This document shows positions 3,001 to 18,140 of a DNA stretch of 64,000 bases, in pieces. The first letter of the stretch is position 1. Each line of letters opens with the position of its first letter. The stretch spans positions 124,001 to 188,000 of IMG/VR virus record IMGVR_UViG_3300045999_008996. One strand, written 5' to 3'. The translations under genes were made by a program, and so were the position numbers. The notes below the pieces were generated by a model. The model saw nothing but the letters and a program-made list of their open reading frames with translations. It searched no databases and was not told the DNA's origin.

Positions 3001-4167
3001 GTTAAAAATGTATGGAGATGCTGAAGTAACTGTATCAACAACAAGATTTAAAGTTGCTCCTGTTGGAGTTGGAAGTGGATTTACTGGTGTATTTTGTGTT
3101 TTATATGTAATTCTTGTACTACTCAATACACTATTAATCACGTATTGCCCATTATAACCATCAACACTCATTCCACTGATTTGAATTGGACTATCAACAC
3201 TCAAACCTTCAATAGTGTTTGCAAGATCCACCGTGATTGTATTTGTCGCTGTTGGGACTGTCCCTCCCCCAGCACGAATACTTGTAATACCTACAGAAGC
3301 ACCTTTTGGACCTACAATACGATATTCATCAATAACTGGTTGAATGTCTACAGTTCCTGCACCATAATCTGGAGTAATTTCTCTTCCCGAAGAAGCACCA
3401 TAAACTGCAGCGACCTTCTCATAATACATGTCTAGATCAGTTCTGGCAGTCCAACCAGATGTTGTCTCATTATATGTAAGAAAATCATCGTTAATTTTTA
3501 CGATATTTACACCATCAGCATATTCAAATCCCGCAAGTTTATGATGAGAGAAATTAGGAACGAAAATATTGTCTGTATAGTCCTTATAGCAAGTTCCATT
3601 TGGATCAGCATCTAAAATAGTAAACTGCCAAAAATAACAAGCACCTGTTGTACGGAAAATAGAAGATCTTTCAATATTATCATTCTCTGGATTTGGAACA
3701 TACAAAGGACGAATCTTGGTCTTACGAAGATCCATACCAACAATTGATGTTCCCCTTGGAACTACAACGCCACCATGAACTGAATTGAGTTTATAAAGTG
3801 GATTATCTGGGTCTGTCAGATCAAACCGAGTATCTATGTCCCATTGACCTAAATTAGTAAGATTTGTTAAACCACTTCTTGCAGAATAAGTTCCTGTGCC
3901 TGTAGGAATATATCCAGGACGGTTATCTATAAGGTGGTCGCCTGGATATAATACAATTGTTGTTTTATTAAATCTATCGTTATTTAATCCACGCTGATAT
4001 GAAAATCTTGCTGCTTCAATCAGTGCTCTTTGAATAGTCTTAAACGGTCTTGTTAAACTATTTCCTGAGTTTTCAATACTGTCCGTCGAATCAAGACTAT
4101 TTGGATCAACATAAAGAATTGTTCCTCTTGCCGACTTCAGAAAATTATCGAGGCGTGAAAGACCCAT
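1..4167 (-). CDS. Large virion structural / tail-fibre-like protein (3' end outside window; missing from ORF track)
   Basis: ATG at 4167 gives MGLSRLDNFLKSARGTILYVDPNSLDSTDSIENSGNSLTRPFKTIQRALIEAARF, an N-terminus typical of cyanomyovirus fibre-like proteins. The frame is still open at base 1 (..EIFRIKQAVTSNSLEIFRSV). Late-promoter-like GATAAATA lies upstream (~4197-4204). Confidence 0.8.
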   Translation of the reverse strand, partial: MGLSRLDNFLKSARGTILYVDPNSLDSTDSIENSGNSLTRPFKTIQRALIEAARFSYQRGLNNDRFNKTTIVLYPGDHLIDNRPGYIPTGTGTYSARSGLTNLTNLGQWDIDTRFDLTDPDNPLYKLNSVHGGVVVPRGTSIVGMDLRKTKIRPLYVPNPENDNIERSSIFRTTGACYFWQFTILDADPNGTCYKDYTDNIFVPNFSHHKLAGFEYADGVNIVKINDDFLTYNETTSGWTARTDLDMYYEKVAAVYGASSGREITPDYGAGTVDIQPVIDEYRIVGPKGASVGITSIRAGGGTVPTATNTITVDLANTIEGLSVDSPIQISGMSVDGYNGQYVINSVLSSTRITYKTQNTPVNPLPTPTGATLNLVVDTVTSASPYIFNISVRSVYGMCGLLADGDKATGFKSMVVAQYTGIGLQKDENAFVKYDASAGEYKDSTKLSNLNIDSRSRFKPTYENFHIKATNDSFLQLVSVFAIGYAQHFVAENGGDLAINNSNSNFGAKALVASGFKREAFSQDDYGYITHIIPPKEIEDVEISVEFGAIDVGVTTSKSAGAGTTSHLYLYGETNQNVQPKVLIEGYHIGAKQNERLNIQSFVGGALTSYSSRVVMPFGPYNSTQSSSEKLFTVLRTPVGINSINSNTLRLTEPHSFSNGESIRIIADDGHLPDGLEANQIYYAITKESATGIGTDEIRIAKTLSSAINGSVSANAISINNKGGTLSIVSRVSDKNPGDIGHPVQFDNQWYVNVDTTDNGIYNIINSSGVSGLGDATTRSYVTRKPDSRSLVDTLYRVRYVLPKNSSTTAKPPTDGFILQESNNIIGTGTTEIGQLYNSSGAISNSTLLRNPKFIANASYSSGTVTIRAEIPHNLKVGEEIEVVNVSPSGYNGTYTVTSIPSAKEFTYTVTTSLGSFVNDTSSRTSSLPYFRRKRYTKTYQVYRTQVVQPYIANVQDGVYYLTLINYSNKPTVTPFRDESFAQPIDNLYPQSNNDNPESDLDASDSHALPDIIGKVVVNDPRKSITKETLESYIVGYGITNIQSSSGTAHTIYTAIDHGLSGITTVSIVSSGSNYGSTGSFTGNLYNARLVGFAGSTTGANATARISVTAGAITGVQIIDGGSAYGIGNTLTVVGVATTASHTIGVVRVESISNNVEDTLKIFGIPSTSNSEYNTIYRVSGISTGKTKEINVISSETISGFSTVGLGSTVTASSGYVFTGKTVGVSTFVYNSVTGLATVGFTTSHGFRVDNKVVIRGANQSAFNGDFIVKKLYSPVGNSLVDINIGIGATTSISPTGTLYAYRPTLTSYGGNLDKDTENSSGRLDYQYAGITTTLGTSILATDLDSTTLNVPNAVSLGLNLGDYLLINNEIFRIKQAVTSNSLEIFRSV

Positions 4168-4211
4168 CTTATTAATACTTATAGTTCCGTTATGGATTAT
4201 TTATCATACAA

Positions 4212-4232
4212 CAAAACCCTCCGAAGAGGGTT
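4212..4232 (-). terminator. Rho-independent terminator with UUCG loop
   Basis: Minus strand ACCCTC-TTCG-GAGGGT-TTTTG. Confidence 0.75.
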
Positions 4233-4257
4233 CTGAAGTCACACGGAAGGGGTTTGG

Positions 4258-4887
4258 TTAAGTATCGCCTTGATTATTATACCACTTCTCTTCTTTCCAC
4301 GTCAACCTTTTTTGCAAGTCTTTATCAAATACCATCAAGTATCTATGCTTTCTACTTCTTTCTTTCCATTCACCCTCTATACCTTTAACAGAACCTCTGG
4401 AATGCTTGGTTCCATCAGCATAATAAAAGTCTTTTTTAGGGTCTGTTAAACCGTAGTAAGTAAAATTACAAGCTCTGTATATAACTCCAGTGTGGTGATT
4501 AGAGTCAGCGTAACTAAGAATAGCACGAACTGTGGCATCTTTTTTAAATCTCCTTATGCAACGACTGACGAACCAAGATGTGATATTATATTCCTCTTTT
4601 TGAACATCTGGATGAATACAGAGTCTTGATAACTCGTAGATTCCTTCCTGCTCGTGCCTTTGCAATCCAAATGCACCTACTGCAATTTCTGGAACTGGGA
4701 GACCAGTAAAAATGCAAGCACCAACAGACCCGCCAATATTAAGGATGTCTGTGAATGACTTTCTGTAAAGTGAGTAGTTATATCCACTTTTGAAATCTTT
4801 TGATTCGTCTTTAAGATAATGGTAGGTATAAAGAAGTTCTTTGATTTCTTCCTTACTTACTTTATCTAGGTAAAAATCAGATTTCAT
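4258..4887 (-). CDS. Mom-like (GNAT-fold) DNA adenine-modification protein
   Basis: Motifs ELSRLC and ILSYADSNHHTGVIYRACNFTYYG match the SYAD..H.G.IY.A.NF.Y.G pattern of Mu Mom homologues. Confidence 0.7.
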   Translation of the reverse strand: MKSDFYLDKVSKEEIKELLYTYHYLKDESKDFKSGYNYSLYRKSFTDILNIGGSVGACIFTGLPVPEIAVGAFGLQRHEQEGIYELSRLCIHPDVQKEEYNITSWFVSRCIRRFKKDATVRAILSYADSNHHTGVIYRACNFTYYGLTDPKKDFYYADGTKHSRGSVKGIEGEWKERSRKHRYLMVFDKDLQKRLTWKEEKWYNNQGDT

Positions 4888-4896
4888 TAAGTATTT

Positions 4897-5070
4897 TTAC
4901 TCACTTTGTTTGCATTCTAACATATATTCCACTGTATTTGCTACATCATTCATAGCATCACGAAGATGTGGTTGTTGTCCAGATTCTTGTTTTAGAATAG
5001 GTCTGGAATCATCAGTAAGAATCCAACGCCACTGCTTCATAGATTCACAATACCACAGATTAATTTTCAT
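4897..5070 (-). CDS. Hypothetical protein (57 aa, MKINLWYCESMKQWRW..)
   Basis: Start re-assigned to the ATG overlapping the upstream ORF stop. Confidence 0.6.
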   Translation of the reverse strand: MKINLWYCESMKQWRWILTDDSRPILKQESGQQPHLRDAMNDVANTVEYMLECKQSE

Positions 5071-5218
5071 GTTTGAAGTGCTCCAATTCGACCCAGTTAA
5101 GGAGGGTTTGGAATGCCCCGATAGAGGCAGGAGTGCAGTTATCTTCCTTAAGTTTTTGAACATAATATTCAAGTGCTTCAATGACCATTTGACGGTCTGT
5201 TTGCGAAATAAGTGACAT
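5060..5218 (-). CDS. Hypothetical protein (MSLISQTDRQMVIEALEYY..)
   Basis: The track extension runs through tRNA-Thr, so the real start is the ATG at 5218. Confidence 0.6.
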   Translation of the reverse strand: MSLISQTDRQMVIEALEYYVQKLKEDNCTPASIGAFQTLLNWVELEHFKHEN

Positions 5219-5235
5219 TGGAGTTATAGAACTCA

Positions 5236-11042: not shown

Positions 11043-12386
11043 TTAGAAAGGTTTTCTACCAAAGCTGTCTCTTACGAGAGTCATACTTGTAAAAGTTTCT
11101 CTTGGTGTAATACGATGACATAAACTTGCTATCATATATATACCACCACTTTTCTTATTATATGTGGCATTCTTCTCAACAGTGAGTCCAGGAAAGTCAC
11201 AATGTACCAAATCACCTGCTCTTAAACTAAAATCACCAGGAATAACTACATTAATCTTAATCAAAAACATCTGGTTATATCTCATAATAGATTGAACCAT
11301 AGTTTTTGGTGCATCATAAATTGGACTAAATGGACTATTTTTCCAATTTTTAAGTTGCTCGTCAAGATTTTTTCCTTTCGGAAGAGTTCCTATATCTAAA
11401 ACGTGATTCATTAACCTTGACACAGGTTTTCTAAACTCTTCAGAAACTGATAGAAGTTCATCTAATCCACCATTTACAATTTTGTCTTTTTGATTTTCAT
11501 CTACAGAATATTCACGAACCTTATAATCCATAGCAAAAAAATCAAAGAAAATACTTCTATTTGCGTAAGTTCCAATAGTTAAATTATTTCCAAGATCAAT
11601 ATCTCTTTCGATATTATAAGATAAAACTTTAGCATCATATTCGCCAGGTTTTGCCTCTGTATTATTATAAATATATTTCTTTTTATATTTTTGATCGAAC
11701 AATGCATCAATAGATCTAAAATTATAACCATCATAATTTTCATAAAAAAGATATCCCGCAGCACCATCTGATTCCCCTACACTTTTTGGAACTGATTTTG
11801 ATGCTAACCAAGTGCAAACATAAAAAGGTTTTCTATCATTACCAATAAAATTATAGTCTATTAATGTGTCGTCCACTTTAACATTTTTTTCAGTTAAAAG
11901 TCCTTTGCCACCAGATAAAGATTCTGTGAGTATTGATTTTACATGATCAGAAATATTTCCTTCGTATCTTTTAACAACTCTACTTTGTTCATTTGCAAAA
12001 TATTCTCTTGGTGAAAAGTCAATGTTGTATAAATCTTTCTGAGTTCCTGGATCAATATCACGAACTCGATTTACATAAAGAGAATTATTTTTTTGAGTTT
12101 TAAATTCTAATTTGTTTGGTTGTACCTGATTATCTTCCAGAATAATATATGCTCTTTCTCCTCCACGAATTGGAAGACCATCAACGATACCATTATTTCC
12201 AATAGAACTATCGGTAAATCCGGTATCAATCACAGTCGTAGACATTGACATGGAGTTGGATAATATATTTTCATAATAACGTAACTCAACAATGCCAGGA
12301 GAAAGATCCACAGAATTCTTACCATCAGAAGACTGTAAAACAAATGCTCGTATATTACTGACTCTTGTTGCTTGATTATCTGACAT
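11043..12386 (-). CDS. Baseplate hub protein (gp27-like)
   Basis: 447 aa, C-terminal IPGDFSLRAGD..G.Y.I..L.H pattern of hub proteins; sits between gp5 and the tape-measure-like genes. Confidence 0.55.
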   Translation of the reverse strand: MSDNQATRVSNIRAFVLQSSDGKNSVDLSPGIVELRYYENILSNSMSMSTTVIDTGFTDSSIGNNGIVDGLPIRGGERAYIILEDNQVQPNKLEFKTQKNNSLYVNRVRDIDPGTQKDLYNIDFSPREYFANEQSRVVKRYEGNISDHVKSILTESLSGGKGLLTEKNVKVDDTLIDYNFIGNDRKPFYVCTWLASKSVPKSVGESDGAAGYLFYENYDGYNFRSIDALFDQKYKKKYIYNNTEAKPGEYDAKVLSYNIERDIDLGNNLTIGTYANRSIFFDFFAMDYKVREYSVDENQKDKIVNGGLDELLSVSEEFRKPVSRLMNHVLDIGTLPKGKNLDEQLKNWKNSPFSPIYDAPKTMVQSIMRYNQMFLIKINVVIPGDFSLRAGDLVHCDFPGLTVEKNATYNKKSGGIYMIASLCHRITPRETFTSMTLVRDSFGRKPF

Positions 12387-14137
12387 TATCCTTGTTTGTA
12401 TAAGAACCCAATAAGTTGAGTTTGATAGTAACTATTTAATAGTGCTTGTTTTGATACTCCAATAGGAAGCATCCTTGTTCCTCCTCCGCCCATTACTGGC
12501 GCAGAACCTCTGCCAATTGGTATCGGAAGAATTGTAGAAGACGGTGCTCCACCAACAATCTCATAGTCTGCCTGCTGCATAATCTGCGGAACACTTGCAG
12601 ATATTGGTGGTGGTGCTTGTTCTGGTGAGACTTGTGCCGGTGCTGGTGGTTGTAATGATGCTGCTGTTGCTGTTACTGCTGCTTGTTGTGGTGAAGGTAA
12701 TGCTGTTGCTGCTGTTGCTGTTGCTGCTGCTTGTTGTGGTGAAGGTAATGCTGGAGCAGGTGGTGCCTGAGTTTGTGTTGCTACTTCCACTGCTGCTTGT
12801 TGTGCTATACGATCTGCTTGTCTTTGTCTTTGTTGTGGTGTTGTTTGTAATTTAGAACCATAAACAGTTTTTGCTGCTCCAATTCTTCTGGACAATGATC
12901 CTTGTATTTCTGAAGCACTTGCTCTTTCCACTTCATAAGCAAACCCTTTTGTTTTTGATGCAACATCAGGACCATAAGACATTGCTTTCTGAAATTGTGC
13001 TGTTTCATAAGCATTGCCACCTTTCAATTCCCAAACAATATAATCTAATTGAAGATTTAAATCAGTAACTGGTTTTCCTTTTTGCTGTGCGAATTGAATT
13101 AATCTTGATTTTCTTCCATATGCCCACTGCATCAAACCAAAAGCACCACTTTTAGGATTTTCTGCTCCAGTTCTAAAACTAGATTCTGCTGCAATATTAC
13201 CTGTAATAGCAGCTGCTTCTTCTTTACTAAATCCTCTCTGAACTAATCCAGAATAAACTCTATTTGCACTTGTAGTTTCTCCTTCACCTAAAGGAGTTTC
13301 TGGTCCTGAATATCCACCTCCTCCTGGTTGAGGTTGCTCTCCACCACTACCACGAAGACTATTAATAGTATTGTTAATACCCTCAAAAAGATTTTTCAAA
13401 AATGGAATTTTTTTAGCAATCTCATCAATATTTTTTTTCAAATCTTTACTATCAAGATTCTCTGGAGGAACACCAAGTAATTGTCCTATCAACTTTGTTC
13501 CTTCTCCAGTAATCCATTTAAGACCCTCCCAAATAGGACTGAAAAACTTTCCTATTTTTTCAATAAAATCTTTGACAGTTTGAAAAACATTTTTTAAAGT
13601 CTCTATAATCTCTTCAAGATTTTTAAAAATTGCAAGAGCAAGAGATCCAAGCAAAACATTGCCAAAGAATCTCATAAGATTAAACTTATCTCCAGGTGCC
13701 TGTATATTTGGCATCTTGAAAGGTTTTTTCTTTGCTTCCTTTTTTAACTTGTCTTCTCTTTCTTTTTTATCTTCTAACTTAGTCTGCTCTTTTTTATTAG
13801 TCTCTTCTTCTTTCTGAGTTTGATTTCTATTATTCAATACATCAATAATACCTTGAAGTGTCTTACCAACTCTGTTAAAAATATCATCTAACCTACCAGT
13901 CTTTACATTTTTCTTAACCTCAGCAGCAGGTGGAAGTGCTTTTATTTCTGCTGGAGGAAGAAACAGATTAGTTGATATTGTTTTCTTTTTAATTACTGGT
14001 TCTTTTACAACAGCACCTTCATCATCAATCTTTTGAATAGATGATGCTTTCTTTTTCTCAAAGAACTTATCTTTGTCAACCTTTTTTTCTGATGGTAGTA
14101 GTGCCTTTGCGGCAAATCCTGCTAGTGCTGGTAACAT
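12386..14137 (-). CDS. Tape-measure-like tail protein with Phage_lysozyme2-type muramidase domain
   Basis: Charged coiled N-terminus; GFSKEEAAAITGNIAAES..GAFGLMQW..QLDYIVWEL lysozyme-2 motif; P/A/Q-rich linker. Confidence 0.7.
   Translation of the reverse strand: MLPALAGFAAKALLPSEKKVDKDKFFEKKKASSIQKIDDEGAVVKEPVIKKKTISTNLFLPPAEIKALPPAAEVKKNVKTGRLDDIFNRVGKTLQGIIDVLNNRNQTQKEEETNKKEQTKLEDKKEREDKLKKEAKKKPFKMPNIQAPGDKFNLMRFFGNVLLGSLALAIFKNLEEIIETLKNVFQTVKDFIEKIGKFFSPIWEGLKWITGEGTKLIGQLLGVPPENLDSKDLKKNIDEIAKKIPFLKNLFEGINNTINSLRGSGGEQPQPGGGGYSGPETPLGEGETTSANRVYSGLVQRGFSKEEAAAITGNIAAESSFRTGAENPKSGAFGLMQWAYGRKSRLIQFAQQKGKPVTDLNLQLDYIVWELKGGNAYETAQFQKAMSYGPDVASKTKGFAYEVERASASEIQGSLSRRIGAAKTVYGSKLQTTPQQRQRQADRIAQQAAVEVATQTQAPPAPALPSPQQAAATATAATALPSPQQAAVTATAASLQPPAPAQVSPEQAPPPISASVPQIMQQADYEIVGGAPSSTILPIPIGRGSAPVMGGGGTRMLPIGVSKQALLNSYYQTQLIGFLYKQG
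12659..12754 (-). repeat. In-frame 48-bp tandem repeat (ALPSPQQAAATATAAT / ALPSPQQAAVTATAAS)
   Basis: GCTGCTTGTTGTGGTGAAGGTAATGCTG at 12678 and 12726. Confidence 0.9.
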
Positions 14138-16353
14138 TATCCTACAATGTTATAGATTGCTCTAACAACCATAGTGGTTGTGTTATTTGGATCCTCAGAA
14201 GAGAATCTTGGAACTGGTGCTTGATTTGGTGATGTTCCACTTGATACCTGTGGTGTTCCGCCACCAGTTGGTATAGGTATAGGTACAATATTACTTCTAC
14301 CAGTTGGTGAAGGTATTGATGGTGTTGTTGGTGGTGTTTGTGCTACTTGTGCAGTTTCTCCTACAGGTGTATGCATCATACCAGATTTAGATGTAGGTGC
14401 CAGATGCCCAACCCAAACTTTTCCGGATCCAGGAAGAATGCCAGTAACTCCACCTTTACCTCCAGTGTTTCTAACATCTGCTAAAGGAAAAGGAACTTTT
14501 GTTCCTTTTGGAACAAAAATATCAACAGATCTTCCGTCTCCACTATGACCATGCTGAGTTATTCCTATTCTTATTAATTTTTTTATTTCCTCCATAGACA
14601 TTCCAGGAGTAAACTTTTGCCCTTTACTTAATTCAGGTGTGACTCCAGAATCTAATAAACCCTTAACTATAGGAGCAGTATCATTTACAAGATCATTAGC
14701 AGTTCCCGTATCCGTTTGGAAATGACCATGCACAAATCCAGGAGCATTCGAAACATTTCCAGTTTCTCCAAATGTGGCACTGCCAGATCCAACTTGATTA
14801 CCAGCAGGCCCTGTTCCTGGTTGTGCGGCACTTGGAGGAAGTCCTGGCATTAATGAAGTTTGTGGTTGAACACCAGTATTTAAGTTTTCAACCATTTTTT
14901 GAGCATCTTTTACAAATTTGTTTATTTTATCAATGACATCACCTTGAGCACCTTCAGGGCCCATAATATCTTTCATTAACTTATCTTGTTCTTTTTGTGA
15001 TATAGGAATATTTTTTTCATTCTCTGCTATTATTTTTTTAGATATTTCTATATCTTTTAATTTTGCCTTATAGAATGGAGTACCTTCATACCCCCTTAAT
15101 TTTTTAAGTTCCTCTTCATCCTTTTTCAATTTTTGTTTTGTTTGCTCCAACTGCCTTTTCATACTTTGAGTTTTAGTCATTCTAGGCAAAAGTTCTTGCT
15201 CTATTCTATTAAGTTTCTTTTCGTCTTCTTGTATCTTTTTCAAAGATTGTTCTTTTTCTTTTCCGGACATTAACTGTGCTTGTCCTTTTCTGAGAACCAA
15301 ATCTTTTTTTAACTTATAAAGTTCACTCTCAACAGCAGGTGCATCTTCACCTCCGGCAAATTTCTGAATATTTTTGAATAACATTTGTCCACCAATAAAT
15401 GCCCCAAACAAACCAAAAGCAGGAAGTAAAGTGGTTAATCCACCAAGAGCAGTTCCAAGCATACCGATTCCACCAATAACTGCTGTGGTTAGACTAAGTA
15501 AAGTAGGAGCAAGTGGAAGAACAGCAATCGCAAGCAATCCACCAAGTATTAACCCAGCATTTTTTTGTAAGAAGTTAGAAAATCCATCAACTGCTTTTTG
15601 ATTTGCTGGATCTTTTAACCATTTAAACATTCCAAGAACAACAGAACCCAAAAGAACATTCGTAAAGAATCTTTTAATCGCACCAAAGAAATCATCAACA
15701 GGTTTTGTAAGTGCTTTAAGTATTGGTGAAGTTGGTTTTTTTGCTTCTAACTTAGATTCTCTTTCTTTTTTCTTTTTCTTTTGTATTTCTTTTCTATCTT
15801 CTTGTGCTGCTTTTTGTTCTGTTTTACCTTCACTTTGTAATAAACCTCTAATAGTAATCAGAGATTCTAAGATATTTCCTATACCTTTTGATAAGTCTTC
15901 TTGGTCAGTACCACCTGCAAGTTTTTTCTCTTGCTCTGGTGCTTCTTCTGCTACTGCTGGTATGAGTTTCTGTGCCTTTACAATTGCACCAGGAGGAGTT
16001 GGTTGTTTGCGATCTAATACCTTATTAATATTAACCTTCTTAGGTTTAACTTTAAATCTTCCAGTCTTATTCTTTACTCTCTTAAGTTCATTTGTAACTA
16101 ATTCAACACTCTCAGTTGTCATCTGAGAGCCTGGCATTCTTCCTTTAACTGCTGCTTCCTTTAAAAGAGAGGCATATTCTTCATAAGTTAAATCAAAAAC
16201 ATCTTCCAATCCCAAAATTGAAAGAATTTGAGAATCTATATCTTCCTCTACTAAATCCTCTGGTTTTTTAGCAGCAACAACAAGTGCAGAAGAAACTTTT
16301 GAATTATCCTCTGCAATATTAGTGTTGGTACTACTTGGAATTTTATCTTCCAT
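14137..16353 (-). CDS. Tape-measure-like (gp29-like) protein, possible C-terminal M23-like domain
   Basis: 738 aa with coiled-coil and hydrophobic helices; HGHSGDGRSVDIFVPKGTKV..VGHL resembles the M23 pattern. Confidence 0.55.
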   Translation of the reverse strand: MEDKIPSSTNTNIAEDNSKVSSALVVAAKKPEDLVEEDIDSQILSILGLEDVFDLTYEEYASLLKEAAVKGRMPGSQMTTESVELVTNELKRVKNKTGRFKVKPKKVNINKVLDRKQPTPPGAIVKAQKLIPAVAEEAPEQEKKLAGGTDQEDLSKGIGNILESLITIRGLLQSEGKTEQKAAQEDRKEIQKKKKKERESKLEAKKPTSPILKALTKPVDDFFGAIKRFFTNVLLGSVVLGMFKWLKDPANQKAVDGFSNFLQKNAGLILGGLLAIAVLPLAPTLLSLTTAVIGGIGMLGTALGGLTTLLPAFGLFGAFIGGQMLFKNIQKFAGGEDAPAVESELYKLKKDLVLRKGQAQLMSGKEKEQSLKKIQEDEKKLNRIEQELLPRMTKTQSMKRQLEQTKQKLKKDEEELKKLRGYEGTPFYKAKLKDIEISKKIIAENEKNIPISQKEQDKLMKDIMGPEGAQGDVIDKINKFVKDAQKMVENLNTGVQPQTSLMPGLPPSAAQPGTGPAGNQVGSGSATFGETGNVSNAPGFVHGHFQTDTGTANDLVNDTAPIVKGLLDSGVTPELSKGQKFTPGMSMEEIKKLIRIGITQHGHSGDGRSVDIFVPKGTKVPFPLADVRNTGGKGGVTGILPGSGKVWVGHLAPTSKSGMMHTPVGETAQVAQTPPTTPSIPSPTGRSNIVPIPIPTGGGTPQVSSGTSPNQAPVPRFSSEDPNNTTTMVVRAIYNIVG

Positions 16354-16510
16354 TTTGTTGCTGTCTTAGATTCTCTTCTTCAAGATGTTGCTGCAATAAT
16401 CCCACATACACATCTCTTTCCCAAGGAATTAGATTTTCAATCTCAGTTAATGAATATTTATGGAACTGTAGTAAGGCAAAATTTATTTTAAAGTAATTCT
16501 CTAGGTTCAT
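16343..16510 (-). CDS. gp51: gp51-like hub assembly protein (55 aa; missing from ORF track; possible -1 frameshift extension of gp26)
   Basis: MNLENYFKINFALLQFHKYSLTEIENLIPWERDVYVGLLQQHLEEE, containing the characteristic W(E)RD.Y motif. Confidence 0.8.
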   Translation of the reverse strand: MNLENYFKINFALLQFHKYSLTEIENLIPWERDVYVGLLQQHLEEENLRQQQNGR

Positions 16511-16521
16511 ATGAACCAGTC

Positions 16522-17241
16522 CTATGCGAAAAAACTTGTCAGACCCTCCAATGCGACAGTGCTCTCAACCTCAGTTTTTGGATTTATAAAAGTAATTTCG
16601 TGAGATAGTTTAGGCATTGTCTCAAAGAACTTTTCAATTTGTTTAAATTGAATACTATTCATTTGCTCTAAGAATTCAATCAATTCTTTTTTAGTCACAT
16701 CAGCAGAAACCCAAACCTCTTCTTCATTATAAATTTTATCAACGCAAGAGGCAATCAATTCAAATGATTGTTCAATTCCTGCACTAGCACCAAAATCAAA
16801 GTTATTTTTGATGAATTGATCAAGCGATGGATACTTCATCTCCATCATCAAGTTATCATCAAGTTTTATTTTATTTGTATGATCTTTTGACTTTTGTACT
16901 TTTATTTCATCAATATCGATTGTCACGGGGACTGAAGTAGTTCCATCATCAGGTGCGATTAGATTAACTTCAATTTTTTCACCAACTGACTTTCCACGAA
17001 TATTTAAAAACAAATATTCAATATCAAAAGTAGGAAGAGACTCTACTTTAATTCCTTTTGTCTGAATACAATTTCTTAAAACTAGTTTAATAGCATTTGA
17101 AATCTCTTTGATATCTTCAGATTCTAGTGCTAAAACTAAAAGTTTTTCTTCTTTTACTAAAAAAGGTCTATATTTTATTTCTTTTCCAGTTGACGGCAAT
17201 TCAAGAGTATAAACAGGAGTTGCAATTGTCGGTAAAGGCAT
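16522..17241 (-). CDS. gp26: Baseplate hub subunit gp26
   Basis: MPLPTIATPVYTLELPSTGKEIKYRPFLVKEEKLL N-terminus. Confidence 0.9.
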   Translation of the reverse strand: MPLPTIATPVYTLELPSTGKEIKYRPFLVKEEKLLVLALESEDIKEISNAIKLVLRNCIQTKGIKVESLPTFDIEYLFLNIRGKSVGEKIEVNLIAPDDGTTSVPVTIDIDEIKVQKSKDHTNKIKLDDNLMMEMKYPSLDQFIKNNFDFGASAGIEQSFELIASCVDKIYNEEEVWVSADVTKKELIEFLEQMNSIQFKQIEKFFETMPKLSHEITFINPKTEVESTVALEGLTSFFA

Positions 17242-17276: not shown

Positions 17277-18140
17277 TCAAGCAAAATCACGACTGAAATT
17301 GGTTGCATCTTGAGATCTTTGTCCAGGGCCTTGTCTTTGAGTTCCTGGAGTAACTCCACGAATAATACCATTATTATAATACTCGTTTGTAATTGTTCTT
17401 GTGAGTTTATTGACATCAAAGAATGGAGAGTTATCAAATAAGTTTGGATTTTTGTATAGATCAATATTAGGTTGAAGCGTTTGTATGTTTTGTACAGAAG
17501 ATGTTAATGTGGAAGATCTATTTCTTTTCATAACATATCTAATGAATGAAAAAGAAACATTACATTTTAAAAGTTGACTTTGTTCATATGAAACTGCCAT
17601 TGAATTAATACTAATTGGAAATCCATAAACAAAAGTATAATCTAAAGTTGTTTGATTTTTTGGAACGTGATGATCTCTTTCAAATTTTGTTAGATAAAAA
17701 TTTACTTTATAGTCATTTGCATATGCCATTCTGTGATGAACATATGGACTTTCAAACTGAGTCCTTGTAAAAACATCACCTACTCCAGTAATATAATCAA
17801 TCCAAGTTTCAAAAAATTCAACAACTTTATAATTTCTATCTACATAAAAAGTCATATCAGCAGTCTCATCATATAATCTCCTATAAACCATTTTTTCACT
17901 CACACCATGATAGTCATTTGTTGCCTCGTGAGTTGCGAGTGCAGATCCAGGTAAATTTGCTTCTGAGCATAGTAAAGAAATATTGTCTACATCAAAAGAA
18001 GTAATTCCTCTTTGAGAAGCAAAAGATGATACGTCCGGAGGAACAGGTATTGTTAATCGATATAATGACGTTTGTGCAATAGTCAGTAATCTAGATTTAA
18101 CGTCACTTACTGTAATTCTATCTGGACGGATACCTGCCAT
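17277..18140 (-). CDS. Tail-tube-fold baseplate protein (gp54/gp19-like)
   Basis: LLCSEANLPG..MTFYVD..FFETW..Y.M tube-protein pattern. Confidence 0.7.
   Translation of the reverse strand: MAGIRPDRITVSDVKSRLLTIAQTSLYRLTIPVPPDVSSFASQRGITSFDVDNISLLCSEANLPGSALATHEATNDYHGVSEKMVYRRLYDETADMTFYVDRNYKVVEFFETWIDYITGVGDVFTRTQFESPYVHHRMAYANDYKVNFYLTKFERDHHVPKNQTTLDYTFVYGFPISINSMAVSYEQSQLLKCNVSFSFIRYVMKRNRSSTLTSSVQNIQTLQPNIDLYKNPNLFDNSPFFDVNKLTRTITNEYYNNGIIRGVTPGTQRQGPGQRSQDATNFSRDFA

What the first reader, a model, noticed from the sequence alone, without database searches (positions are those of the whole stretch)
16343..16540. Lambda G/GT-like -1 frameshift linking gp26 to gp51
Seen: gp26 ends AGT TTT TTC GCA TAG, a U_UUU_UUC heptamer (16534-16528). 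The -1 frame reads TTT TTT CGC ATA GGA CTG GTT CAT ATG.. straight into the 55-aa gp51-like ORF. After an 8-nt spacer, a hairpin CTGGTTC-ATAT-GAACC(T)AG (16519-16501) also buries the gp51 ATG. The pair sits immediately upstream of the tape-measure-like genes. Known: tail-assembly chaperone pairs (lambda G/GT, P2 E/E') use a programmed frameshift at this position, and T4 itself is not a recognised example. Inference: the cyanomyovirus gp26 + gp51 pair is a frameshifted chaperone pair giving 239-aa and ~299-aa products.
Basis: partly seen in the sequence, partly recalled or inferred. Interest (0 to 1): 0.78.

Follow-up and report, generated by a model that had tools for sequence, protein, structure and literature searches.

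The report
Frameshifted tail chaperone in a cyanophage
The two small genes called gp26 and gp51 in this marine cyanophage are almost certainly one tail-assembly chaperone gene read in two ways through a programmed -1 ribosomal slip. This is a real, strongly conserved feature, but of a kind already described for T4-like phages, so it matters mainly as a correction to genome annotation.

Summary
On the minus strand, gp26 (16522-17241) ends AGT TTT TTC GCA TAG. The heptamer T_TTT_TTC (16534-16528) is in X_XXY_YYZ phase, and the 55-aa 'gp51' ORF (16343-16510) lies in the -1 frame, which is open across the gp26 stop.

In 161 related loci the heptamer T_TTT_TTN is present in phase in all of them, while neighbouring synonymous sites are saturated. 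Codon periodicity switches from the 0 frame to the -1 frame exactly at the heptamer. About 22% of unique relatives have no start codon before the conserved core of the C domain.

T4 gp51 is a contiguous gp26-like domain plus this C domain, and it is colinear with the predicted trans-frame product. T4-type phages that carry a full-length gp51 lack the slippery run (T4: TTC TTT).

Best explanation: a lambda G/GT-like -1 programmed frameshift makes a 239-aa short chaperone form (TAC-N) and a 299-aa long form (TAC-NC) upstream of a tape-measure-like gene. The window's own hairpin is weak; stronger hairpins in other registers occur in sister clades.

Vladimirov, Gautam and Davidson (Virology 2022) already identified gp26/gp51 as the chaperones of T4-like phages. 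Two citing papers say that work reports poly-T slip sites. I could not read it. I rate the novelty low.

The parts
16522..17241 (-). gp26-like ORF, 239 aa. This is the short chaperone form (TAC-N), the 0-frame product ending ...LTSFFA*.
   Evidence: ORF list. PF12322 T4_baseplate, E 1.6e-71, residues 9-239. phrog_150 profile positions 5-232 of 282.
16528..16534 (-). Slippery heptamer U_UUU_UUC in X_XXY_YYZ phase, 3 nt before the gp26 stop codon.
   Evidence: Sequence. T_TTT_TTN in phase in 161/161 related loci: 151 end in C, 7 in A, 3 in T. Entropy is 0 at six positions.
16343..16528 (-). -1-frame continuation: 61 codons, RIGLVHMNLENYFK...QQNGR, plus stop. This is the C domain of the long form (TAC-NC, 299 aa in all).
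   Evidence: Open -1 frame. phrog_634 E 1.5e-27 and phrog_150 positions 231-281, abutting the end of the gp26 match at 232. BLASTP to T4 gp51 residues 212-246, E 6e-5. -1-frame codon periodicity begins right after the heptamer.
16343..16510 (-). The conventionally called 55-aa 'gp51' ORF, starting from ATG 16510. It is a sub-part of the C domain and may or may not also be initiated independently.
   Evidence: ORF list. phrog_634 E 6.2e-25. AGGA lies 9 nt upstream of this ATG, but ATG/GTG/TTG is absent at this place in 26 of 120 unique relatives.
16501..16519 (-). Downstream hairpin. The core is GGTTC (16517-16513) / GAACC (16508-16504) with loop AUAU. The spacer is 8-10 nt after the heptamer.
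   Evidence: -7.1 kcal/mol, z -1.6. In the window's clade 85.6% of cells are paired, 2 of 5 pairs show double changes, and one pair is unpaired in 14 of 36 sequences. Hairpins starting 4-11 nt after the heptamer are enriched across the family, 71% against 32% at control positions.
16544..16549 (-). GGAGGG, a Shine-Dalgarno-like word 9-10 nt upstream of the heptamer. It may stimulate slipping in this genome, but it is not conserved.
   Evidence: Sequence. At this Glu codon GAG is used in 32% of relatives against 36% background, so there is no sign of selection.
17277..18140 (-). Upstream tail-tube-fold gene, 287 aa, in the position of gp54 (tube initiator).
   Evidence: PF23849 Phage_TTP_2, E 1.5e-15. 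phrog_45 tail tube, E 2.4e-34. The same position in relatives is annotated gp54 or tail tube.
14137..16353 (-). Downstream 738-aa gene, tape-measure-like by position. Its ATG overlaps the last 11 nt of the C-domain ORF.
   Evidence: ORF list. No Pfam hit. No BLASTP similarity to T4 gp29. Look-alike clusters carry Peptidase_M23, SLT and TMP_3, which is a lead only. A large ORF lies downstream of the pair in the eight GenBank relatives, directly in six and after one small ORF in two (Melnitz and phiM7).

Best explanation
gp26 and 'gp51' are one tail assembly chaperone locus decoded in two ways.

Most ribosomes translate gp26 in the 0 frame and stop at TAG, giving the 239-aa short form (TAC-N). 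A minority do something else. With tRNA-Phe on UUU in the P site and on UUC in the A site of U_UUU_UUC (16534-16528), they slip back one base. They then read CGC AUA GGA... through what is the 0-frame stop and continue for 61 codons. The result is a 299-aa long form (TAC-NC) whose C domain is the part homologous to the C-terminus of T4 gp51.

By analogy with lambda G/GT, the long form would bring the downstream tape-measure-like protein to the growing tube, and the short form would coat that protein.

Shown here:
- the sequence architecture;
- its conservation;
- the switch of coding constraint at the heptamer;
- homology and colinearity with T4 gp51.

Inferred, not shown:
- that the slip is ribosomal;
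- its efficiency;
- the chaperone function and the partner protein.
For: 1. The heptamer T_TTT_TTN is in 0-frame phase in 161/161 loci spanning cyanophages and Methylophilales, Sinorhizobium, Pseudomonas, Aeromonas, Stenotrophomonas and Vibrio phages. It lies 3 nt before the stop in 159 of them.
2. Entropy is 0 at heptamer positions 1-6, against 0.96-1.94 at the 14 neighbouring 0-frame third positions. The codon before the heptamer is AGT, TCT, GAT or AAT, so it always ends in T. Background use is TTT 66% of Phe codons and T-ending codons 61-81% for Ser, Asp and Asn.
3. Periodicity of variation is 0.76/0.67/1.54 by 0-frame codon position upstream. It becomes 0.81/0.57/1.32 by -1-frame codon position from the first base after the heptamer.
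4. The first -1 codon is CGN (Arg), while the overlapping last gp26 residue varies among A, G, E and V. Five of the seven TTTTTTA variants keep Arg as AGR and two read Ser (AGT), although the 0 frame changes Phe to Leu in all seven.
5. The -1 frame is open for a median of 182 nt past the stop. The +1 frame closes after a median of 22 nt.
6. 26 of 120 unique relatives have no ATG, GTG or TTG in the first 13 -1-frame codons. In 30 of 114 the first Met falls at or after alignment column 20 of the C domain.
7. T4 gp51 residues 1-201 match PF12322 (E 3.9e-52). Its tail matches phrog_634, and it covers phrog_150 positions 13-280. The window's gp26 ends at profile position 232 and the trans-frame part starts at 231.
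8. Natural control: T4, RB16, 44RR, Octan and RB49 have a separate full-length gp51, and their gp26 genes lack the T6 run. T4 encodes Phe-Phe as TTC TTT.
9. A hairpin starting 4-11 nt after the heptamer occurs in 71% of unique relatives against 32% of control positions. Strong ones occur in 43% against 7%. In the P-HM1 clade it reaches -12 kcal/mol, z -3.65.
10. Synteny is tube-like gene, gp26, C domain, large ORF in the cyanophage, Methylophilales, Sinorhizobium, Aeromonas and KVP40-like Vibrio relatives. The pf16 and Mendera records keep gp26, the C domain and the large ORF, but do not name the gene upstream.
11. Published context: Vladimirov et al. 2022, as summarised. Acinetobacter phage Octan annotates gp26 and gp51 as 'tape measure protein assembly chaperone'.
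Against: - There is no direct evidence of the 299-aa protein: no proteomics or ribosome profiling was available.
- The window's own hairpin is weak (z -1.6) and its covariation is modest.
- The upstream SD-like word is not conserved.
- In the window's clade an ATG with AGGA 9 nt upstream would allow independent initiation of a 55-aa product.
- I found no profile-level homology between the gp26 family and the Mu gp41 chaperone family: hhalign probability 0.1%.
- The tape-measure identity of the 738-aa ORF rests on position and weak leads.
- The related loci are not phylogenetically independent.
Confidence: 0.82

Rival explanations
1. Transcriptional slippage. RNA polymerase adds one extra U in the T6 run in a fraction of transcripts, so those mRNAs encode the same 299-aa fusion without any ribosomal slip.
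For: The site is a homopolymer run, with T6 in most loci and T7-T8 in Melnitz, phiM7 and pf16. The product would be identical. The title of Vladimirov et al. [quoted passage not shown] I could not read the paper, although describes that mechanism as separate short and fused genes.
Against: From general knowledge, six U is short for productive slippage by bacterial RNA polymerase. The base before the run is never T, so the run is never lengthened on its 5' side. Downstream hairpins at 4-11 nt are enriched, which is typical of ribosomal frameshift sites and not expected for slippage. RNA-seq contigs of a P-HM1-like phage span the site with no inserted or deleted letter. Contigs drop rare variants, however, so only majority-level slippage is excluded.
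Confidence: 0.07
2. Two ordinary, separately translated genes, as currently annotated in GenBank. gp26 ends at TAG and the 55-aa gp51 starts at its own ATG. The T run merely encodes a conserved Ser/Asp-Phe-Phe motif.
For: The window has ATG 16510 with AGGA 9 nt upstream. 93 of 120 unique relatives have an ATG within the first 13 -1-frame codons. All GenBank records inspected annotate two genes, or only gp26. T4 gp26 also ends ...EFFELL, so Phe-Phe is a protein-level motif.
Against: Protein-level conservation does not explain invariant synonymous positions. T4 encodes the same Phe-Phe as TTC TTT. Coding constraint in the -1 frame starts at the heptamer, upstream of any ATG. 22% of unique relatives have no start codon there. 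Profile matches extend upstream of the ATG to the heptamer. The homologous region is contiguous with the N domain in T4 gp51.
Confidence: 0.05
3. Both routes operate in this clade. The frameshift makes the 299-aa long form, and the ATG at 16510 also yields a free 55-aa C domain, giving three products.
For: An ATG with a plausible AGGA is present in the window and in most of its close clade. The hairpin overlaps this ATG and could modulate its use.
Against: The ATG is not conserved across the family. From general knowledge, neither lambda nor T4 is known to make a free C domain. Nothing here requires a third product.
Confidence: 0.15

Closest known systems
T4 gp26 / gp51, the tail (tape-measure) assembly chaperones of T4-like phages (Vladimirov, Gautam & Davidson, Virology 2022, doi 10.1016/j.virol.2021.11.003; known to me only through)
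   Same: The N domain belongs to the same family: PF12322 matches the window's gp26, T4 gp26 and T4 gp51 residues 1-201. The C domain is also the same family: phrog_634, and BLASTP E 6e-5 to T4 gp51 residues 212-246. The trans-frame product is colinear, without gaps, with T4 gp51 across the junction.
   Different: T4 and about 1,375 related records make the long form from a separate, contiguous gene 51. They have no slippery run at the end of gene 26. The window has a single N-domain gene and needs a -1 shift to reach the C domain.
Lambda G/GT, P2 E/E+E' and Mu gp41: the programmed -1 frameshift conserved in tail assembly genes (Xu, Hendrix & Duda, Mol Cell 2004; reference lists seen)
   Same: The locus sits between the tube gene and a tape-measure-like gene. 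A short upstream ORF and a -1 overlapping ORF are linked by an X_XXY_YYZ heptamer close to the upstream stop. The long form is expected to be the minor product.
   Different: The N domain is much larger, 239 aa against about 100-145. I found no detectable profile similarity to the Mu gp41 family (hhalign probability 0.1%). The heptamer is U_UUU_UUC rather than lambda's G_GGA_AAG (the latter from general knowledge).
The tail assembly chaperone frameshift proposed for Pakpunavirus, Vandenendeviridae and Andersonviridae myoviruses (phage Adele paper, PMC12846349)
   Same: The argument is the same kind of comparative one: a conserved poly-T motif at the 3' end of the short-form gene, and a -1 frame open through a 'hypothetical' downstream ORF just before the tape-measure gene.
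   Different: The motif there is GTTTTT and the protein family is different. Here the motif is a full U_UUU_UUY heptamer and the proteins are PF12322 members.

Membership tests
Frameshifted tail assembly chaperone pair (lambda G/GT type; criteria of Xu, Hendrix & Duda 2004) | The locus lies between the tail tube gene and the tape measure gene. | tested here: met
   Upstream is a 287-aa tail-tube-fold protein (PF23849 E 1.5e-15, phrog_45 E 2.4e-34). Downstream is a 738-aa ORF overlapping by 11 nt. Its tape-measure identity rests on position and look-alike leads only. The gp26, C domain and large ORF part is the same in all eight relatives; a tube-like gene upstream is annotated, or the gene is unnamed, in six of them, and not named in pf16 and Mendera.
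Frameshifted tail assembly chaperone pair (lambda G/GT type; criteria of Xu, Hendrix & Duda 2004) | The second ORF overlaps the end of the first in the -1 frame, and that frame is open across the first ORF's stop codon. | tested here: met
   In the window the -1 frame is open from 40 nt upstream of the first base of the gp26 stop down to 16343. In 160 of 161 loci it stays open, for a median of 182 nt past the stop. The +1 frame closes after a median of 22 nt.
Frameshifted tail assembly chaperone pair (lambda G/GT type; criteria of Xu, Hendrix & Duda 2004) | An X_XXY_YYZ slippery heptamer in 0-frame phase inside the overlap, conserved among relatives. | tested here: met
   U_UUU_UUC lies at 16534-16528. 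T_TTT_TTN is in phase in 161/161 loci. Two of the 0-frame synonymous positions inside the heptamer are invariant and the third is C in 93% of unique relatives (entropy 0.43-0.45), below every neighbouring third position.
Frameshifted tail assembly chaperone pair (lambda G/GT type; criteria of Xu, Hendrix & Duda 2004) | A stimulatory element: a downstream structure or an upstream SD-like sequence. | tested here: inconclusive
   The window's hairpin folds at -7.1 kcal/mol, z -1.6, with modest covariation. Hairpins are enriched family-wide and are strong in the P-HM1 clade, but they sit in three different registers. The SD-like word is not conserved.
Frameshifted tail assembly chaperone pair (lambda G/GT type; criteria of Xu, Hendrix & Duda 2004) | Both the short and the long protein are made, with the long form the minor one, and both are needed for tail assembly. 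| not testable with these tools
   No proteomic or ribosome-profiling data were reachable. RNA-seq contigs only show that the mRNA consensus keeps T6 and the stop codon.
Frameshifted tail assembly chaperone pair (lambda G/GT type; criteria of Xu, Hendrix & Duda 2004) | Sequence or fold relationship to established chaperones (HK97 gp13 spiral fold, Mu gp41, lambda G). | tested here: not met
   hhalign of the gp26 family (A4) against the Mu gp41 family (A3) gives probability 0.1%. No Pfam chaperone family hit at E <= 10. No solved relative. The language-model look-alike search gives 61 of 100 non-PF12322 hits in chaperone families, but at scores of 0.45-0.52, which is a lead only.
T4 gp26/gp51 chaperone family (PF12322 N domain plus gp51 C domain) | An N domain belonging to PF12322. 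| tested here: met
   E 1.6e-71, residues 9-239.
T4 gp26/gp51 chaperone family (PF12322 N domain plus gp51 C domain) | A C domain homologous to the C-terminal ~48 residues of T4 gp51 and colinear with it after the N domain. | tested here: met
   phrog_634 E 1.5e-27. phrog_150 positions 231-281 directly follow the end of the gp26 match at 232. BLASTP to T4 gp51 gives E 6e-5.
T4 gp26/gp51 chaperone family (PF12322 N domain plus gp51 C domain) | T4-type biogenesis: the long form is encoded by its own contiguous gene, with no recoding. | tested here: not met
   The window has one N-domain gene. The C domain is reachable only in the -1 frame.

The most novel reading that the evidence does not exclude
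If the 2022 paper did not analyse cyanomyoviruses in detail, three points shown here would be new.
1. The U_UUU_UUY frameshift is the ancestral and near-universal way of making the long chaperone form across the non-enterobacterial T4 superfamily: Kyanoviridae, KVP40-like, Angelvirus, phiM12-like, pf16-like and Menderavirus, with a variant CUUUUU-type site in Ackermannviridae.
2. The T4 two-gene solution arose by tandem duplication and frame fusion, with RB16 (gp54-gp51-gp26) as an intermediate arrangement.
3. The stimulatory hairpin has been replaced repeatedly in different registers while the heptamer stayed fixed.
Probability: 0.25. Interest if true: 0.45.

Novelty: already known. Interest (0 to 1): 0.3.

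Why it matters
Hundreds of cyanophage and other T4-like genome records annotate 'gp26 baseplate hub subunit' and 'gp51 baseplate hub assembly catalyst' as two independent genes, or miss the second one. If the frameshift reading is right, three things follow.
- The second ORF is not a gene of its own but the C-terminal domain of the long chaperone form.
- The correct annotation is a joined CDS with ribosomal slippage.
- The function is chaperoning of the tape-measure protein rather than forming part of the baseplate hub.

This affects gene counts, core-gene sets, proteomic databases (the junction peptides are missing from them) and ideas about how tail length is set in the most abundant marine myoviruses. 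It also gives a clean natural example of two interchangeable ways of making a short and a long protein form: recoding, or gene duplication with fusion.

Tried and rejected
- The primary paper (doi 10.1016/j.virol.2021.11.003, PubMed 34826709) is not in the library. I relied on two citing papers. Five other citing papers added nothing.
- Literature searches for gp26 / gp51 / frameshift / cyanophage returned only coincidental gene numbers.
- hhalign of the gp26 family against the Mu gp41 family found no relation.
- A Pfam scan at E <= 10 found no chaperone family. The PDB sequence search found nothing meaningful. NCBIfam found nothing.
- BLASTP of the 738-aa ORF against T4 gp29 found no similarity.
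- Rfam found no frameshift element. No promoter-like or terminator-like site falls in the junction between the two ORFs.
- No RNA runs were listed for the window itself. For the P-HM1 relative only assembled contigs were available, and these cannot show low-level U insertions.
- A scan of viral contigs with the KVP40-like gp26 found nothing. The scan with T4 gp26 found only 7 close loci.
- I considered an upstream SD-like stimulator, as in dnaX, and rejected it as a conserved feature.
- I considered a single homologous hairpin across the family and rejected it, because three different registers are used.


Full report
**What is in the sequence**

All features lie on the minus strand.
- The 239-aa ORF 16522-17241 ends ...GGT CTG ACA AGT TTT TTC GCA TAG.
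- The heptamer T TTT TTC occupies 16534-16528 and is in X_XXY_YYZ phase with that ORF.
- The stop TAG is at 16524-16522.
- The 55-aa ORF 16343-16510 starts at an ATG 14 nt after the first base of the stop, which puts it in the -1 frame.

Translating the -1 frame from 16564 down to 16343 gives no stop and reads ...DKFFRIGLVHMNLENYFKINFALLQF.... A -1 slip on the heptamer would therefore join 238 residues of gp26 to 61 further residues, giving a 299-aa protein.

**What the genes are**

The window is an uncultivated T4-like cyanomyovirus. It is 100% identical to IMG/VR contig UViG_3300045999_008996. Its nearest GenBank relatives are Synechococcus phages at 70-74% nucleotide identity.

- The 239-aa protein is a full-length member of PF12322 'T4_baseplate', the T4 gp26 family (E 1.6e-71).
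- The 55-aa ORF matches PHROG 634, 'baseplate hub assembly catalyst'. It also matches the last 40 positions of PHROG 150, the gp26 family profile, whose first 232 positions are covered by gp26 itself.
- When the -1 frame is translated from the heptamer rather than from the ATG, the PHROG 634 match extends upstream to profile position 56. The PHROG 150 match then covers 231-281, directly abutting the end of the gp26 match at 232.
- Upstream lies a tail-tube-fold protein (PF23849, phrog_45).
- Downstream, overlapping by 11 nt, lies a 738-aa ORF. It has no Pfam hit and no BLASTP similarity to T4 gp29. Its look-alike clusters carry Peptidase_M23, SLT and a tape-measure family, which is a lead only.

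The order tube-like gene, gp26, small ORF, large ORF recurs in relatives. I saw it in P-SSM2, P-HM1, Methylophilales phage Melnitz, Sinorhizobium phiM7, Aeromonas AsFcp_2 and a KVP40-like Vibrio phage. In Melnitz and phiM7 one further small ORF lies between the small ORF and the large one. Pseudomonas pf16 and Stenotrophomonas Mendera keep gp26, the small ORF and the large ORF, but their records do not name the gene upstream.

**Relation to T4**

T4 gp51 (249 aa) matches PF12322 over residues 1-201 (E 3.9e-52). It covers PHROG 150 positions 13-280 and matches PHROG 634 through its tail. T4 gp26 (208 aa) is the same N domain alone.

T4 gp51 residues 212-246 align with the window's -1-frame product (E 6e-5). 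Extending that alignment without gaps puts T4 V199-F200-K201 opposite the window's F-F-R at the shift site.

T4 therefore has a short form (gp26) and a contiguous long form (gp51) in two genes. The cyanophage has the short form plus a C domain that is reachable only by a -1 shift. The 'gp51' of cyanophage annotations is the C domain only.

**Conservation test**

I collected 161 loci with a complete gp26 3' end. Most came from IMG/VR searches with the window's gp26 and with P-HM1 gp26; the other eight are diverse GenBank phages.

- Every locus has T_TTT_TTN in 0-frame phase: 151 TTTTTTC, 7 TTTTTTA, 3 TTTTTTT. It lies 3 nt before the stop in 159.
- Among 135-141 unique sequences the first six heptamer positions have entropy 0 and the seventh 0.43-0.45. 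The 14 neighbouring 0-frame third positions range from 0.96 to 1.94.
- All sites share one tree, so a rank argument holds despite relatedness. The three third positions inside the heptamer are the three least variable of 17, which would happen by chance once in 680.
- The codon before the heptamer changes amino acid (Ser, Asp, Asn) and codon family (AGT, TCT, GAT, AAT) but always ends in T.
- Background usage would allow TTC (34% of Phe codons) and non-T endings (19-39%).

**Frame switch**

Upstream of the heptamer, variability follows the 0 frame: mean entropy by codon position is 0.76/0.67/1.54. From the first base after the heptamer it follows the -1 frame: 0.81/0.57/1.32.

The first -1 codon is CGN (Arg) in 93% of the unique relatives, while the overlapping last gp26 residue varies among A, G, E and V. 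Five of the seven TTTTTTA variants keep Arg as AGR and two read Ser, although the 0 frame changes Phe to Leu in all seven. Purifying selection on the -1 frame thus begins at the slip site, upstream of any start codon and across the 0-frame stop.

**Start codons**

In 26 of 120 unique relatives there is no ATG, GTG or TTG within the first 13 -1-frame codons. In 30 of 114 unique C-domain sequences the first Met lies at or beyond alignment column 20, inside the conserved core. In Aeromonas AsFcp_2 the ORF is not annotated at all. Independent initiation is therefore not a conserved way of making this domain. In the window's own clade an ATG with AGGA 9 nt upstream exists, so I cannot exclude it there.

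**Natural negative control**

Phages that carry a separate full-length gp51 number about 1,375 records, covering T4, RB49, RB16, 44RR and Acinetobacter phages. The five I examined do not keep the slippery run at the end of gene 26.

| Phage | End of gene 26 |
|---|---|
| T4 | GAG TTC TTT GAG (Phe-Phe kept, run broken) |
| RB16 | GCG TTT TTA |
| Octan | GAA TTT GTT |
| RB49 | AGT TTC CTT |
| 44RR | motif absent |

The run is thus conserved only where a shift is needed.

**Stimulators**

It folds at -7.1 kcal/mol with z -1.6, and 15 of 200 shuffles fold as well.

In 36 distinct sequences of the window's clade, 85.6% of cells pair and two of five pairs show double changes. One pair is unpaired in 14 sequences, and much of the stem is fixed by the Val-His-Met-Asp-Leu coding.

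Across the family, a perfect hairpin of at least 5 bp starting 4-11 nt after the heptamer occurs in 71% of unique sequences, against 32% of control positions inside gp26. Strong ones occur in 43% against 7%. In the P-HM1 clade the hairpin is a 6-7 bp G+C stem after a 4-5 nt spacer (-12 kcal/mol, z -3.65).

The hairpins sit in at least three different registers. The element has therefore been replaced rather than inherited.

The SD-like GGAGGG 9-10 nt upstream in the window is not conserved. GAG at that Glu codon is used in 32% of relatives, against 36% background.

**Ribosomal or transcriptional**

The product would be the same if RNA polymerase added a U in the run. Three observations argue against this.
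- The run is exactly six T in 132 of 135 unique sequences.
- It is never extended on the 5' side.
- The downstream hairpin enrichment fits a ribosomal site.

RNA-seq contigs of a cultured P-HM1-like phage span gp26 and gp51 with four substitutions and no inserted or deleted letter. This excludes majority-level editing only, because contigs drop rare variants. I give transcriptional slippage about 7%.

**Comparison with what is known**

The architecture meets the positional and sequence criteria of the conserved tail-assembly frameshift of lambda G/GT, P2 E/E+E' and Mu.

I could not show sequence homology to those chaperones. hhalign against a Mu gp41 family alignment gave probability 0.1%, and Pfam gave no chaperone family. 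A language-model look-alike search was dominated by chaperone families but at low scores. The fold test could not be run.

The closest known system is T4 gp26/gp51 itself. Vladimirov, Gautam and Davidson (Virology 2022) identified these as the tail assembly chaperones of T4-like phages. I could not read that paper, but two citing papers describe it.
- One says that some T4-like phages carry one short gene and one longer fused gene instead of frameshifting.

A GenBank record from the same period annotates both gp26 and gp51 as 'tape measure protein assembly chaperone'. No paper in the searchable library describes the cyanophage case explicitly. All cyanophage records I inspected still annotate two separate genes.

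**Verdict**

It rests on comparative evidence only and has not been shown at the protein level. The novelty is low, because it is the expected, and apparently published, mode of making the long chaperone form in T4-like phages outside the T4 group. The practical value is a correction of annotation in several hundred genome records, together with testable junction peptides.

Noticed in passing
L050:2217-2310 (IMG/VR contig UViG_3300024344_002245): A 20-nt tandem duplication (CATATGGACCTAGAGAATTA twice) just after the gp26 stop breaks the -1-frame C domain after 41 nt. It is either an assembly artefact or a defective variant. This is the only one of 161 loci with a closed -1 frame.
   Followed up: partly
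L061 and L074, about 2220-2260; also the clade L138-L153: These close and more distant relatives have no ATG at the start of the 'gp51' ORF (for example ...CGC ATA GGA CTT TGT TAT ATA GAT...). In the L138-L153 clade the first Met lies in the ENM motif, halfway through the domain.
   Followed up: yes
L180 (Escherichia phage RB16) 610-3187; L089 (T4) 3405-5229: RB16 has gp54, full-length gp51, gp26 and gp25 in tandem on one strand. T4 has genes 26-25 inverted next to gene 51. This looks like tandem duplication with frame fusion of one copy, followed by an inversion, as the route from the frameshift to the two-gene solution.
   Followed up: partly
L171 (Vibrio phage Kuja, Ackermannviridae) about 3200-3435; L170 (Vibrio phage D510) about 3060-3270: A gp26-like gene is followed by a -1-frame ORF that resembles the C domain in its spacing and PW motif (by eye; not run against a profile). 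The site is C_CUU_UUU or CUU_UUC, not a canonical X_XXY_YYZ heptamer. The next large gene is annotated baseplate hub/tail lysozyme rather than tape measure.
   Followed up: no
L159-L169 (seven loci): The U_UUU_UUA variant of the heptamer (the motif used by HIV-1, from general knowledge). The first -1 codon switches from CGN to AGR in five of the seven loci, keeping Arg, and to AGT (Ser) in two, while the 0 frame changes Phe to Leu. Two of the loci with near-identical hairpin coding (G-L-S-H-D/E-S-L) differ by two compensatory base-pair changes in an 8-bp stem (L163 against L168).
   Followed up: partly
window 14137-16353 (-) and 12386-14137 (-): The 738-aa tape-measure-like ORF has look-alike clusters with an M23 peptidase. 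The next ORF (583 aa) carries a Phage_lysozyme2 domain (E 7.7e-27) and matches the C-terminal part of a PHROG annotated as tape measure. Two consecutive large tail proteins thus carry cell-wall-hydrolase-like domains.
   Followed up: no
L089 (T4) 3803-3830 (-) against 4480-5229 (+): T4 gp26 ends ...GLKEFFELL, and the equivalent stretch of gp51 reads ...DVFKLLVN. gp26 thus runs three residues past the Phe-Phe, with a tail resembling the start of the C-domain linker. This hints that T4 gene 26 derives from a truncated fused copy.
   Followed up: no
L090:1201-2100 (P-HM1) with runs X1-X3 and X5: RNA-seq contigs of 1.4-2.1 kb from an infection transcriptome cover gp26 and the C-domain ORF as one piece, with no indel. 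Seawater metatranscriptome contigs of several related strains also cover the junction.
   Followed up: partly
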